Part shown: piece by piece, positions 33,346-36,706 of the stretch
Layout: each line of letters starts with the position of its first letter
How positions within the stretch are numbered: position 1 is the first letter of the stretch
Origin: Oikopleura dioica
Lineage: Eukaryota > Animalia > Chordata
Assembly: GCA_907165135.1 (NCBI GenBank)
Contig: OU015569.1
Coordinates: forward strand, 496,001 to 560,000
Length of the DNA: 64,000 nucleotides
Direction: 5' to 3'
Made by a program: the position numbers and the translations under genes
Notes under the pieces: generated by a model
Told to the model about the DNA's origin: nothing
Database searches by the model: none
What the model saw: the letters and a program-made list of their open reading frames with translations, nothing else

Positions 33346-35391
33346 TAAAATGGAAATGTTGTTCTATATTCTGTTAGTAGTCAGATTTGAACCAGTGACT
33401 ATTCGGGCGTTGTTTACGAAGCGATTATCCGATTGTTTGCAAATTTGTAAATATAGGTTTTGCCTTCTTCTTGCGCAGCTCTCTCAGACTCGCAGAGAAA
33501 AACAGAGAAAACAAAATGCGGCTGCTTCCTGCGCTTTTCGCCTTTTCAGGAACGGGCTTTTCAGCTGAGCTCGGCAAGAGCCTGTGTAGAAAACCTGAGT
33601 CAGGTTTTGAAAAAGCCTAAGGATCATTTGACTCTATTCTTAGCTTCTGGCGAAGCCGCCTCGCGGATTTGTTTCTAAAAAGCCGCAACGCGGCTTTTAA
33701 ATAAAGCTTTTTCAAAACCTGAGTCAGGTATTCTTCACAGGTTGTCGAGCCCAGCTTCTCAGAAAAAGGAAATAAAGAGACGGCAAAGAGAACGGTTGAG
33801 AAGCTCGTTGAAAGATGCGGGAAGAAGGAATTGGCTGCGCAACTCGCAGCGCAATTTGGGCAGCTTCATGTCCGATGTGCAGCAGAACTGCGGTGCCCCT
33901 TCCGCTGCTTCGAACAGATGGATGGGCATGCTTGGCGAAAAGATCGTCGGCGGCCAGAGCATTTTCGACGAGAAGGCCTGGCCCTGGCTCGTCTCCATCG
34001 ACGGCAACTGCGGAGGCTCCCTCATTGACGACAGACACGTCTTGACCGCCGCCCACTGCGTCGATTTATCAGTTTGGTCAACTCTCTTGTCAATATGACG
34101 CAACTTCATGAAGTTATTTCTGACTGAAATTTAGCTGAAAATAGAGAGGCTGCTTGCGGCTTCGAAATACAATCAATAAAGCCGCGCTTTGCGCGGCTAC
34201 TCATTTTGCTCGAAGCCGCAAGCGGCTTCTCGATTTTTAGCTGTCTTCTTAGCGTAGAAAGAGTTGTAAACCTTGAAAAAGGCCCAATTGCCGGAGTGGA
34301 AAAGAACAAAGTGCTGCACATGGAGTTGCACCACGGCTCCAAGGACTTCAACTCCGAGGGCGGCAAGACTGCGCAAGCAGAGGCGATTTACGAGCACTAC
34401 GACTTCGTCCGCGGCTCCCTGGTCAACGACATCGCGCTGATCCGCCTCAAGAAGCCGGTGAAGCTCGACGACTTCACGAACGTCGTCTGCTTGCCCGAAC
34501 GAGACGAGCGCGTTCCATCCGGCACCGAGGCCTTCGTCGCCGGCTGGGGATACATGAACGAGAACGCCTTCTGGACCCAGGATCTCGCGCGGGAGGTAAT
34601 GGTGCCCATCGTGCCGCAGGAATGGTGCGACGAAGCGTACACGCGGAAAATCAACGAGGAAACTGAAGTTTGCGCTGGATTCAAGGCTGGCGGAAAAGGT
34701 GGTTAAATTTGAGAGATACGAAGATGTCAAATCACATTTTCAGACGCTTGCCAGGGCGATTCTGGAGGACCGCTGGTCACGAGGGATTCCGGAAAAGGAG
34801 CGACTCTGCACGGCTTGGTAAGTTGGGGATCAGGCTGCGCGCGCGCCGGCAAATACGGAGTGTACACTCGAGTCGCTGGCTACATCGACTGGATTGAGGA
34901 AGCGAAGGAAGTGCTGGCCAACTGCAAGGCGCACAAGTGGTGCCAAGACGGAAAGAAGGTTTATAACGATCTCGCCGGGCCCGGACAGCTGGAAAAGGAG
35001 AAAGGAGGCGAGCCAGACGCGCAACTCAAAAACCAAAGGTAAGTCACGCGCTCCTCTTCCTTTAGCAGCTGAAATCGTAGAAGCCCGTGGCAAAACCGAC
35101 TGTCCAAAAAGAAACGTCCTCGGATCAAGTCTGCAAAGGAGTCGCTTTCTCCCAACTAACAAAGGAGCCGTTCAACTGCGGCGAGCAAGGATGCTCGGTC
35201 AGCTGCGCCATCGACGGGGTCACAAACTTCATCTGTCACCGGAAAAAGGCTGGCGTAGCACCCAGAAGAAGGTGAAAGTCAGCCCGAGAAGACCGCTGGC
35301 GTGCTCGAAGCCGTTGAAACAGTTCGACAAGTGTGGCCCGCTCGCGAACGCCGACAGCCAGATTCAAGTCGACTGCAGTTTGGGATTTTAA
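33346..35391 (+). CDS. Trypsin-like (S1A) serine protease with basic pro-region and C-terminal Cys-rich modules; may continue into the cyclophilin
   Basis: KIVGGQ activation site, [26 protein letters not shown] (S1 Asp), [18 protein letters not shown]; start codon approximate. Confidence 0.9.
33565..33754. mobile_element. MITE copy interrupting a pro-region exon of the protease
   Basis: TSD CTTTTCAG (33557-33564) / CTTCTCAG (33755-33762); flanks read ERAFQ | KKEIKRR. Confidence 0.75.
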
Positions 35392-35910
35392 TCGAATTCG
35401 ATTTTCGCGAGTCTGTTTATATTATATCCTGAAAGGGTAAAATCCCTGGGCCAGACTTAACCGCAAAGGGCGTCCAGACAAATGCACTGTTCAATGTCAA
35501 CGGGGAACCGTCGAATTCGTCCAGCAAGGAAGCAAACTCAGCCCCAAAATGGCCAAAATGGAAGGAATCATGTGCCTCAAAAAAGGAGGATACGGATTCA
35601 GGTAAAATTCAATTCAATTTTCGCGATTTTTCTTCATGAATTTCCAGCAAGCGAAACAACGGAATCGGCAGCTTTTCGTGCACTTCCGACGGGAACAACC
35701 GTGGTGCTATTGAAGAGGCCGCTGATCAAGCAGAAGTTCAGAACAGTCCAGTTTCTGCGCAGCCGGAAAAGTCTTTTGAAAGCGAGGACTACGACTACCA
35801 CCAGAACTACGTCGCTGATGAAGCTAAAGGACCGCGTTGAAACTCACTTATTCAATCACCTTTTCCTTCAGTATTGATTAAAAGACAGTGATTTGTAAAC
35901 GCAAAAACAG

Positions 35911-36706
35911 TAGTTGGCGGGGGCGACATGGACCACGATTTCTTCTTCGGCGACGGAGCTCTTCAAAACGACCCCAACAAGCCAATGGTCACAGGTTTGC
36001 AAATCTGTTTTCAAGATGGACACGTTCAATTTCAGACCTTGTGAATTTCGAGATCTCGATCGGCGGCGAAGCTGTGGGCGACGTCTCTCTCGGCCTCTTC
36101 GGCTTCGTAGCGCCCAAAACTGCCAAGAACTTCGCCGAACTGGCCAAGAGACCAGTTGGAGAAGGATACCTCGACTCGATCTTTCACCGCGTCATCGCCG
36201 GTTTCATGGCTCAAGGTAAATCACAGTCTTGTCTTCTCGATATTAAAAAAGGGCGGTGATTTAGGAGGTGATTTTACGCTTGGAAATGGCAGAGGCGGCC
36301 ACAGCATCTACGGTGCCCAGTTCGACGACGAGCCCTTCACGATCAGGAAAGCGTCGCCTCTTCTTCCTTTTGAAAGCGAAAAAGAGGCGACGGAAATTCA
36401 GTCACAAATCACGGGGAATGCTCTCGATGGCGAACGCGGGCCCGGACACTAATGGAAGCCAGTTTTTCATCACTTTCACGGTAAAAAAGCGGGAAAGCTG
36501 CGATTCTCGAGCGGAAAATTCAGGGCACCCCGTTCCTCGACGGCAAACACGTCGTCTTCGGCAAACTAGTGAAAGGCCACGAAGTTCTGGACCAAATAGA
36601 AGCGGCCGAGACCGACGCGAAAAACAACCGACCCTTCCGCGACATCAGAATCACCAAGTCCCAACACCAGAAACTTCTCAATCCCTTCCCAGTTGCACTC
36701 GAATAA
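35911..36706 (+). CDS. Cyclophilin-type peptidyl-prolyl isomerase domain (PPIB/PPIC-like)
   Basis: VAPKTAKNFAEL, IFHRVIAGFMAQGGDFT-x-GNGRGGHSIYG, GMLSMANAGPDTNGSQFFIT, LDGKHVVFGK; GA-AG intron at 36347-36401. Confidence 0.93.

What the first reader, a model, noticed from the sequence alone, without database searches (positions are those of the whole stretch)
33346..36706. Probable trypsin protease + two Cys-rich modules + cyclophilin fusion protein
After the protease domain come two similar Cys-rich modules: GCSVSC...FICHRKKGW...LACS and KCTVQC...IMCLKKGGY...FSCT. The second straddles the apparent stop at 35389-35391 if 35383-35435 is spliced as an intron (GG donor). Exons 35436-35601 and 35647-35835 (acidic linker EDYDYHQNY) then join in phase through the 35836-35910 intron to LVGGGDMDHDFFFG...KPMVTDLVNFEISIGG, the start of the PPIB-like domain. 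The cyclophilin has no signal peptide of its own and there is no intergenic gap. I know of no S1A protease-cyclophilin architecture, but I did not search. Several A-run corrections (35106, 35243, 35439) are required.
Basis: partly seen in the sequence, partly recalled or inferred. Interest (0 to 1): 0.75.

Follow-up and report, generated by a model that had tools for sequence, protein, structure and literature searches.

The report
Protease–cyclophilin fusion gene of Oikopleura
The window holds the Okinawan Oikopleura dioica copy of a real, conserved larvacean gene that joins a secreted trypsin-like protease, two cysteine-rich modules and a cyclophilin B-type proline isomerase in one protein; spliced mRNAs of sister lineages prove the fusion, which is in public databases but apparently undescribed, while in this assembly two one-base deficits in A-runs break the frame.

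Summary
Pfam finds Trypsin and Pro_isomerase on the window's exons. A 743-aa ORF on a metatranscriptome contig (L017) matches Norwegian O. dioica genomic DNA (L016) block by block at 97-100% identity with all seven introns that L016 covers removed. It runs from signal peptide through protease, two six-Cys modules and an acidic linker to the cyclophilin. The two junctions that make the fusion are GA-AG introns. Two other relatives give 752-aa and 740-aa ORFs of the same architecture, one on a contig with a poly(A) tail. In a fourth relative, module 2 and the start of the cyclophilin share one stop-free ORF.

The public model already exists: CBY08499.1 / UniProt E4X9T4_OIKDI, auto-named 'Vitamin K-dependent protein C'. 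My paper searches found no description of it.

In the window I map 12 phase-consistent exons, 33516-36706. The only frame-breaking differences from the Norwegian cDNA are A5 instead of A6 at 35028-35032 and 35243-35247. These explain the truncated 250-aa OKI2018_I69 model. They are more likely Nanopore homopolymer miscalls than real mutations, but this is untested.

The true acceptor is 35454. This scan had not noted the gene before on other DNA.

The parts
33516..33549 (+). Exon 1: start codon and short signal peptide ([11 protein letters not shown]), ending in phase 1
   Evidence: ORF and coordinates. The orthologous first exon is spliced the same way in cDNA L017 against genomic L016, where intron 1 is GA-AG.
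33550..33814 (+). Intron 1 (GA-AG, 265 nt), carrying a hairpin MITE at 33581-33741; a second copy lies upstream at 33118-33303
   Evidence: Donor and acceptor dinucleotides. Inverted repeats I2 and I3 and direct families D1 and D2. The Norwegian orthologous intron is GA-AG and 98 nt.
33815..34076 (+). Exon 2: pro-region with one Cys, activation site K|IVGG, and protease up to His57 (AAHC)
   Evidence: Pfam Trypsin. 93% amino-acid identity to P0161, pN/pS 0.07.
34077..34252 (+). Intron 2, inferred GT-AG of 176 nt, with a palindromic element at 34133-34242. It is absent from the other lineages.
   Evidence: The other lineages read straight through here (L007 ORF 320-1339; L016 block). The window has 209 extra bases. 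Removing 176 by GT-AG leaves 33 bases, or 11 codons, in frame. The alternative, 34073-34281 with a TT-AG boundary, is not excluded. Palindrome I5.
34253..34698 (+). Exon 3: protease core with Asp102 (NDIALI)
   Evidence: Pfam Trypsin 8.4e-20; pN/pS 0.08.
34699..34743 (+). Intron 3 (GT-AG, 45 nt), specific to this lineage
   Evidence: Absent from L007, L016 and L012, where the protease is one open frame.
34744..35038 (+). Exon 4: Asp189, GDSGG, end of the protease, and a C-terminal extension with two Cys (CKAHKWC)
   Evidence: Pfam Trypsin 7e-17; pN/pS 0.07.
35028..35032 (+). First frame break: an A5 run where the Norwegian genome and cDNA have A6. It puts the donor at 35039 in phase 2 instead of phase 0.
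   Evidence: The public OKI2018_I69 model P0153 reads through in the shifted frame and ends ..SLSPN*. One Norwegian-type transcript contig, L018, has A7 at this site.
35039..35080 (+). Intron 4 (GT-AG, 42 nt)
   Evidence: The orthologous intron is proven by cDNA, GT-AG, phase 0. Alignment.
35081..35381 (+). Exon 5: K/P-rich linker, six-Cys module A, and the first two Cys of module B
   Evidence: Aligned with four other taxa. pN/pS is 0.12 in frame 2 up to 35245 and 0.15 in frame 1 from 35248.
35243..35247 (+). Second frame break: A5 where the Norwegian sequence has A6 with identical flanks. It hides ..FICHRKKGW..
   Evidence: Lineage L007 also keeps the frame here.
35382..35454 (+). Intron 5, between module A and module B: GG-AG, 73 nt. 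It contains the apparent stop at 35389-91.
   Evidence: The acceptor AG|ACTTAA is conserved and proven by cDNA in the Norwegian lineage, where the donor is GA. L007 has GG. In the window, GG at 35382 is the only G-initial donor in phase 2; this is read from the sequence and is an inference.
35455..35601 (+). Exon 6: module B, third to fifth Cys (KCTVQC .. IMCLKKGGYGF)
   Evidence: Differences from lineage L007 are almost all synonymous from the first base on. pN/pS 0.07. There is no in-frame ATG before KMAKMEG, so it is an internal coding exon.
35602..35647 (+). Intron 6 (GT-AG, 46 nt)
35648..35829 (+). Exon 7: last Cys of module B and an acidic Tyr-rich linker (EDYDYHQNY)
   Evidence: Conserved as coding, with an in-frame 12-nt indel. 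pN/pS 0.17.
35830..35910 (+). Intron 7, the junction that fuses the cyclophilin: GA-AG, 81 nt. An alternative GT donor at 35836 is in phase only in this lineage. An in-frame TGA lies at 35838-40.
   Evidence: The orthologous GA-AG intron is proven by cDNA. The TGA sits at the same codon position in L002, L007 and L016.
35911..35994 (+). Exon 8: (V)VGGGDMDHDFFFG..NKPMVT, the linker and the N-terminus of the cyclophilin B type
   Evidence: All differences between the acceptor and the ATG at 35928 in three lineages are synonymous third positions. pN/pS 0.08.
36036..36215 (+). Exon 9: cyclophilin, with Arg55, Phe60, Met61 and Gln63 (FHRVIAGFMAQ)
   Evidence: Pfam Pro_isomerase 1.7e-10; translation.
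36265..36346 (+). Exon 10: cyclophilin, followed by a GA-AG intron (36347-36401)
   Evidence: it matches P0161 residues 631-656.
36402..36480 (+). Exon 11: cyclophilin (SMANAGPDTNGSQFFIT)
   Evidence: Pfam Pro_isomerase 2.5e-08.
36524..36706 (+). Exon 12: end of the cyclophilin with a B/C-type C-terminal tail (..NPFPVALE) and stop TAA 36704-06 inside AATAAA (36702-07)
   Evidence: Pfam 1.6e-10. PDB matches to CYP-5, CypC and CypB run through the tail..

Best explanation
The region 33516-36706 (+) is one 12-exon gene. It is the Okinawan O. dioica ortholog of CBY08499.1 / E4X9T4_OIKDI.

Domain order of the roughly 750-aa product:
- A short signal peptide.
- A pro-region tethered by one Cys.
- A trypsin-like S1A protease with an intact catalytic triad, Asp189 and a K|IVGG activation site.
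- A K/P-rich linker.
- Two six-Cys modules, the second probably Sushi/CCP-like.
- An acidic Tyr-rich linker.
- A cyclophilin of the B/C (secretory) type that has lost its own signal peptide.

The parts are joined by splicing. Three or four of the introns are non-canonical (GA-AG or GG-AG), including both junctions that create the fusion. That is shown by cDNA for the Norwegian lineage and inferred by orthology for the window.

The fusion is ancient within larvaceans. The cyclophilin is a diverged paralog of the canonical stand-alone PPIB, which the same genome still has on another chromosome.

In this assembly the frame is broken twice by A5-for-A6 differences. Most likely (about 0.65) these are Nanopore homopolymer undercalls that survived polishing. 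They explain why the public OKI2018_I69 model is a 250-aa stump.

Inferred mechanism, not tested: the precursor enters the secretory pathway on the protease's signal peptide. It either works as a protease with a tethered proline isomerase, or it is cut at the Lys-rich linker to release the two enzymes.
For: Organism and assembly:
- The genome is 64.3 Mb in 19 contigs, which equals OKI2018_I69 (PMC8008620).

Domains:
- Pfam domains sit on the window's exons.

Transcript evidence for the fusion:
- The L017 ORF of 743 aa matches L016 genomic DNA in eight blocks at 97-100% identity. The introns removed are GA-AG, GT-AG, GA-AG, GT-AG, GA-AG, GT-AG, GT-AG.
- L014 has a poly(A) tail and a 752-aa ORF. 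L015 has a 740-aa ORF. Both carry Trypsin plus Pro_isomerase.
- In L012 the protease and module A form one ORF. A phase-matched GT-AG intron follows, then a 224-codon ORF that holds module B, a linker and the cyclophilin start.
- Public models are CBY08499.1 / E4X9T4 (720 aa) and CBY41845.1.

The window's gene structure:
- The exon table is phase-consistent except at the two A-runs. Those two are the only indels against the cDNA that are not a multiple of 3.
- pN/pS is 0.07-0.18 in all exons while synonymous sites are near saturation.
- P0153 ends exactly as the shifted frame predicts.

Background and paralogy:
- GA-AG introns are frequent in O. dioica (PMC7072748). About 11% of introns in this assembly are non-canonical.
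- The best PDB matches of the cyclophilin are C. elegans CYP-5, cyclophilin C and cyclophilin B, and they extend through the C-terminal tail.
- A canonical PPIB with its own signal peptide lies at G000:C1:14355984-14356598.
Against: - No transcript or independent read data of the Okinawan lineage could be reached, so splicing in this very genome is inferred by orthology.
- As assembled, the window cannot encode the fusion.
- The assembly was polished with about 100x Illumina reads. Two residual errors 215 nt apart are therefore not expected by default.
- An Illumina-derived transcript contig of the Norwegian type, L018, carries A7 at the first site. Real length variation at this run therefore exists or is at least possible.
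- The donor of intron 5 differs among the three lineages: GA, GG, and in the window GG displaced by 3 nt.
- The boundaries of intron 2 are not settled.
- The in-frame TGA just inside intron 7 is conserved in four lineages. That might point to a retained-intron product lacking the cyclophilin.
Confidence: 0.82

Rival explanations
1. In the sequenced Okinawan individual or lineage the two A-run deletions are real. The locus then makes only a truncated protease ending ..SLSPN*. The modules and cyclophilin downstream would be a very recently silenced remnant or a segregating null allele.
For: - The assembly was Illumina-polished.
- The public model is the 250-aa stump.
- A-run length at the first site also varies in an independent Illumina-derived transcript contig, which has A7 (L018).
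- A canonical PPIB exists elsewhere in the genome, so loss of this cyclophilin need not be lethal.
Against: - Both lesions are one-base losses in A6 runs, which is the typical Nanopore error.
- About 1.2 kb of coding sequence downstream of the first lesion has no other stop, frameshift or broken splice site. It shows pN/pS of 0.07-0.18.
- Two independent slippage mutations with no other decay would require a very short and lucky history.
Confidence: 0.3
2. The region is an operon of two or three separate genes: protease, Cys-rich protein and cyclophilin. The cyclophilin mRNA would be made by SL trans-splicing at the AG at 35909-10 and translated from ATG 35928.
For: - In-frame stops lie at 35040, 35389 and 35838.
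- An ATG lies 17 nt after an AG acceptor.
- The TGA at 35838 is conserved in position in four lineages.
- From my own knowledge, O. dioica uses operons and SL trans-splicing.
Against: - Full-length spliced ORFs cross every one of these points in three species.
- Exon 6 is under strong purifying selection from its first base and has no start codon.
- The 17 nt before the ATG change only at synonymous third positions.
- In L012 no stop separates module B from the cyclophilin.
- The Met is not conserved in P0147 or P0149.
- A B-type cyclophilin starting at that ATG would lack a signal peptide.
Confidence: 0.05
3. The fusion ORF is a polyprotein precursor. After secretion or zymogen activation it is cleaved at the Lys-rich linker into a free protease and a free module-cyclophilin piece, so the two enzymes do not act as one molecule.
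For: - A K/P-rich linker (..KKPKKPAKKP.. in P0161) follows a protease whose Asp189 predicts Lys/Arg specificity.
- The cyclophilin has no signal peptide of its own, so the fusion may serve only for delivery.
Against: There is no direct evidence. Lys-Pro bonds are poor trypsin sites (my own knowledge). The linkers differ strongly between species.
Confidence: 0.3

Closest known systems
CBY08499.1 / UniProt E4X9T4_OIKDI (O. dioica OdB3, 720 aa, auto-named 'Vitamin K-dependent protein C'), and the partial allelic model CBY41845.1
   Same: Ortholog. It has the same order of protease, two six-Cys modules, acidic linker and cyclophilin. Amino-acid identity to the window's exons is 73-95%.
   Different: The public model lacks the signal-peptide exon and skips 15 residues of the protease that the cDNA-derived ORF P0161 contains. 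Its name is misleading. The window's copy has two extra introns, an 11-codon insert after His57 (inferred) and two A-run frame breaks.
Cyclophilin B/C family (human PPIB and PPIC, C. elegans CYP-5)
   Same: These are the best solved-structure matches, at E 1e-55 to 1e-47, and the alignment includes the C-terminal tail. The residues Arg55, Phe60, Met61, Gln63, Ala101-Asn102-Ala103, Gln111, Phe113, Leu122 and His126 can be read off the exons (residue roles from my own knowledge of CypA).
   Different: It has no signal peptide of its own and sits at the C-terminus of a protease. Position 121 is Phe rather than Trp in O. dioica, which in other cyclophilins lowers cyclosporin binding (my own knowledge). 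The genome keeps a separate canonical PPIB.
Complement-type mosaic serine proteases (MASP-1/2/3, C1r, C1s) and other CCP-bearing proteins
   Same: An S1A protease is combined with small disulfide-rich beta modules. The model of module B aligns mostly to CCP/Sushi modules at Z 3-4.3, rmsd about 3 A, over 55-66 residues. The language-model neighbours are Sushi clusters at score 0.87.
   Different: The modules lie C-terminal to the protease, not N-terminal. They have six Cys, not four. There is no Pfam Sushi match. All structural scores are below the level that shows kinship.
Other natural cyclophilin fusions (TRIM5-CypA, RanBP2, PPID, PPIE, PPIL2, PPWD1; listed from my own knowledge)
   Same: A cyclophilin domain is appended to an unrelated functional domain. 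TRIMCyp chains appear among the PDB matches.
   Different: None of these joins a protease and none is a secretory-pathway fusion. Here the donor is a B-type, not an A-type, cyclophilin.

Membership tests
Peptidase family S1A (trypsin/chymotrypsin fold) | Match to the Trypsin profile (PF00089) above the curated cut-off | tested here: met
   Window exons score 36, 72 and 62 bits against a cut-off of 20.6. Full-length orthologs score 181-190 bits.
Peptidase family S1A (trypsin/chymotrypsin fold) | Catalytic triad His57, Asp102, Ser195 in their conserved motifs | tested here: met
   TAAHC, NDIALI and GDSGGP are read from exons 2, 3 and 4.
Peptidase family S1A (trypsin/chymotrypsin fold) | Zymogen activation site before IVGG, and Asp189 for Lys/Arg specificity | tested here: met
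   ..LGEK|IVGGQ.. and [10 protein letters not shown]. Met by sequence only; activity was not assayed.
Cyclophilin-type PPIase (PF00160), B/C subtype | Match to the Pro_isomerase profile above the cut-off | tested here: met
   Window exons score 41.8, 34.8 and 41.8 bits against a cut-off of 21.7. Orthologs score 146-162 bits.
Cyclophilin-type PPIase (PF00160), B/C subtype | Active-site residues (CypA numbering Arg55, Phe60, Met61, Gln63, Asn102, Gln111, Phe113, Trp121, Leu122, His126) | tested here: met
   All are present in exons 9-12 except Trp121, which is Phe (GTPFLDGKH). P0147 and P0149 keep Trp.
Cyclophilin-type PPIase (PF00160), B/C subtype | Own N-terminal signal peptide | tested here: not met
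   The cyclophilin is preceded by coding exons, not by a hydrophobic leader. The signal peptide is the protease's. The canonical PPIB elsewhere in the genome has one.
Cyclophilin-type PPIase (PF00160), B/C subtype | C-terminal extension beyond the core, as in CypB, CypC and CYP-5 | tested here: met
   PDB alignments to 1h0p, 2rmc, 3ich and 1cyn run to residue 741 of 743.
Sushi / CCP module (PF00084) | Profile match, four-Cys pattern and conserved Trp | tested here: not met
   No Pfam match at E up to 1 on the window pieces, or up to 0.01-0.1 on orthologs. The modules have six Cys.
Sushi / CCP module (PF00084) | CCP beta-sandwich fold | tested here: inconclusive
   The AF2 model has mean pLDDT 66. 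Foldseek finds nothing at E <= 0.001. In the VIA-align search the list for module B is dominated by CCP modules, but Z is only 3-4.3. Atlas neighbours are Sushi clusters at 0.87.
O. dioica operon with an SL trans-spliced downstream gene | Separate mature mRNAs, with the upstream ORF closed by a stop and the downstream ORF opened by its own ATG | tested here: not met
   Continuous spliced ORFs occur in three species, and L012 has an open frame without a stop. Not testable for the Okinawan lineage itself.

The most novel reading that the evidence does not exclude
The protease and the proline isomerase work as one extracellular machine, a natural version of the protease-coupled PPIase assay. The tethered cyclophilin would turn cis Xaa-Pro bonds of proline-rich substrates into the trans form that a trypsin-like protease can cut. 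Such substrates could be house or food-filter proteins, or prey proteins.

The hypervariable A-run at the end of the protease exon (A5, A6 and A7 were all seen) would be a real allelic or slippage switch between a protease-only product and the protease-isomerase product.
Probability: 0.12. Interest if true: 0.75.

Novelty: new variant of a known kind. Interest (0 to 1): 0.55.

Why it matters
- An S1A protease fused to a cyclophilin is a domain architecture I could not find described. Two full-text searches gave no relevant paper.
- The fusion is conserved and under purifying selection in at least four larvacean lineages. It therefore has a function and is not an annotation chimera.
- It offers a natural test of whether proline isomerisation is coupled to proteolysis outside the cell.
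- It is a clean example of gene fusion with loss of the downstream signal peptide.
- There are two practical lessons. Non-canonical GA/GG-AG introns hold this gene together. Two one-base homopolymer differences were enough to reduce the model in the chromosome-scale Okinawan assembly to a 250-aa stump, so other truncated models there may have the same cause.

Tried and rejected
1. I first favoured an operon of separate genes, because of the in-frame stops, the ATG 17 nt after an acceptor, and a TGA conserved in L002. I rejected it once the spliced full-length ORFs and the L012 open frame appeared.
2. The exhaustive representative search with exon 6 gave only three spurious multi-repeat hits, to Tudor and cadherin-like proteins. 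It found no orthologs.
3. Cluster 2 mixed the 54-aa exon ORF with unrelated proteins, which I dropped.
4. A pattern scan of JGI metagenomes for the first A-run with window-specific flanks gave only chance matches in unrelated contigs with 42-62% GC. It produced no independent Okinawan sequence.
5. A profile-profile comparison of module A with module B did not establish that they are duplicates.
6. G000:C4:10718809, a candidate PPIB-like paralog, did not look B-type: its core sequence differs and its tail differs.
7. I looked for alternative acceptors or donors that would rescue the window's frame without an A-run change. None has an AG in the right register. A GC donor at 35019 would rescue only the first site and has poor context.
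Exons were searched one by one by reference, and full-length comparisons used database proteins (P0161, P0147, P0149, P0151).
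Full report
**What the window is.** The genome has 64.28 Mb in 19 contigs and the window is C2:496001-560000. This matches the Okinawan Oikopleura dioica assembly OKI2018_I69, which was built from Nanopore reads with Racon, one round of Pilon polishing and 11% non-canonical introns (PMC8008620). A cluster look-up gave the window's own public model: CAG5094251.1, OKI2018_I69.XSR.g13389.t1, 250 aa. 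None of the DNA is human.

**Checking the observation.** Pfam finds Trypsin on three stop-free pieces and Pro_isomerase on three. The pieces between them have no family. I add TAA at 35040-42. An ATG at 35928 follows an AG acceptor at 35909-10. At that point I favoured separate operon genes.

**Comparative evidence.**
- A word search with the first cyclophilin piece led to seawater-metagenome contigs of other O. dioica lineages, about 80% identical in DNA.
- Synonymous sites between lineages are near saturation (pS 0.6-0.9) while proteins are 73-95% identical. Conservation is therefore informative.
- L007 shows the protease as one uninterrupted ORF, followed by a 45-nt GT-AG intron and then an uninterrupted module A.
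- Exon 6 changes almost only at synonymous positions from its first base and has no start codon.
- The bases between the 35910 acceptor and the ATG also change only at third positions.

**Proof of the fusion.**
- A third, AT-rich relative (L012) has signal peptide, protease and module A in one ORF. A phase-matched GT-AG intron follows. Then comes a 224-codon open frame with the rest of module B, a linker and the first cyclophilin exons.
- A search with that relative's protein found ORFs of 752, 740 and 601 aa that carry both Pfam domains.
- Their clusters hold CBY08499.1 / E4X9T4_OIKDI (720 aa) and a 743-aa ORF on a JGI contig, L017.
- L017 matches Norwegian genomic scaffold FN656682.1 (L016) in eight blocks at 97-100% identity, with seven introns removed. 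Their boundaries are GA-AG, GT-AG, GA-AG, GT-AG, GA-AG, GT-AG and GT-AG. The module A|B junction and the linker|cyclophilin junction are both GA-AG.
- L014 ends in a poly(A) tail after AATAAA.
- GA-AG introns are known to be frequent in O. dioica (PMC7072748).

**The gene in the window.**
- Guided by these junctions I map 12 exons, 33516-36706.
- All phases agree with one ORF except at two places: A5 at 35028-32 and A5 at 35243-47. At both, the Norwegian genome and cDNA have A6 with the same flanks.
- These are the only indels in about 2.2 kb of coding alignment that are not a multiple of three.
- Read as assembled, exon 4 splices into ..NQRSPWQN..SLSPN*, which is exactly how the public 250-aa model ends.
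The one at 35106 is misplaced. The one at 35439 is unnecessary, because the conserved acceptor is at 35454 rather than 35435.
- For intron 5 the window has TT where the Norwegian donor GA sits.
- Two introns are specific to this lineage: 34699-34743 and one around 34077-34252. The latter carries a palindromic element. Its most economical reading is GT-AG, which leaves 33 extra bases in frame.

**Artefact or real break?** I cannot decide this with the data reachable here.
- For artefact: both lesions are one-base losses in A6 runs, the characteristic Nanopore error. Everything downstream is intact and constrained, with pN/pS of 0.07-0.18.
- For real: the assembly was polished with about 100x Illumina reads. 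An independent, Illumina-derived Norwegian-type transcript contig (L018) has A7 at the first site and is otherwise identical to L017 apart from one synonymous change.
- I put the odds at about 0.65 to 0.3.

**What the protein is.**
- The protease has the full catalytic triad, Asp189 and a K|IVGG activation site.
- The cyclophilin is closest to C. elegans CYP-5, cyclophilin C and cyclophilin B, including their C-terminal tail. It keeps the catalytic residues, with Phe at position 121.
- The genome also has a canonical PPIB with its own signal peptide on another chromosome. The fused domain is therefore a diverged B-type paralog that lost its leader.
- The middle region has twelve conserved Cys arranged as two six-Cys modules across four taxa.
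- Kinship between the two modules is not statistically shown.
- An AlphaFold model (pLDDT 66) gives no significant Foldseek match. A full VIA-align scan aligns module B mainly to CCP/Sushi modules at Z 3-4.3, and language-model neighbours are Sushi clusters at 0.87. This is a lead, not a classification.

**Mechanism.**
- Shown: one mRNA and one ORF in sister lineages.
- Inferred: secretion through the protease's signal peptide. The two enzymes then either act while tethered or are released by cleavage in the Lys-rich linker.

**Novelty.** The gene model is public but misnamed. Two full-text searches returned no paper that describes it. The exhaustive search with exon 6 found no relatives outside this gene. 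I rate it a new variant of known kinds: a new architecture built from known domains, restricted as far as seen to larvaceans.

Exons were used one by one by reference.

Noticed in passing
window 33118-33303 and 33581-33741: There are two copies of one hairpin MITE family, with arms 86-92% complementary and a shared CCTGTGTAGAAA..CCTGAGTCAGG terminus. One lies just upstream of the gene. The other fills most of the GA-AG intron 1, which is 265 nt here but 98 nt in the Norwegian lineage.
   Followed up: partly
window 34073-34281 and 34699-34743: Two introns of the protease are absent from all other lineages seen (L007, L016, L012). The first carries a 110-nt palindrome (34133-34242), and its boundaries are not canonical at the orthologous insertion point (TT..AG). 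A GT-AG reading (34077-34252) leaves 11 extra codons after His57. This looks like intron gain by insertion of a mobile element.
   Followed up: partly
L018:~1019 (Logan ERR9850598) versus L017:1002-1007: A Norwegian-type transcript contig is identical to L017 apart from one synonymous change and A7 instead of A6. The difference sits at the same A-run that is A5 in the window, so run lengths of 5, 6 and 7 are all on record at this site.
   Followed up: partly
window 35838-35840; L002, L007, L016 at the same codon position: An in-frame TGA three codons into intron 7 is conserved in position in four O. dioica lineages, although the bases around it differ. If the intron were retained, the product would stop just before the cyclophilin.
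   Followed up: no
G000:C1:14355984-14356598 (-), locus L025: This is the canonical stand-alone cyclophilin B of the same genome. It has a signal peptide (MKVFLGLLALLGLAHA) and a tail ending ..EPFAVSKEPVKE.
   Followed up: partly
window 36702-36707: The stop codon TAA lies inside the poly(A) signal AATAAA. The same arrangement occurs in the Norwegian cDNA L017.
   Followed up: no
window 35785-35812: An acidic Tyr cluster (EDYDYHQNY, DDYDYQQNY in the other O. dioica lineages) resembles tyrosine-sulfation sites. It is absent from the two more distant species (P0147, P0149).
   Followed up: no
L013 (Logan ERR12177216): A further relative has the protease followed by a much longer Cys-rich tail in one ORF, then a GT intron. 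The contig ends before any cyclophilin could be seen.
   Followed up: no
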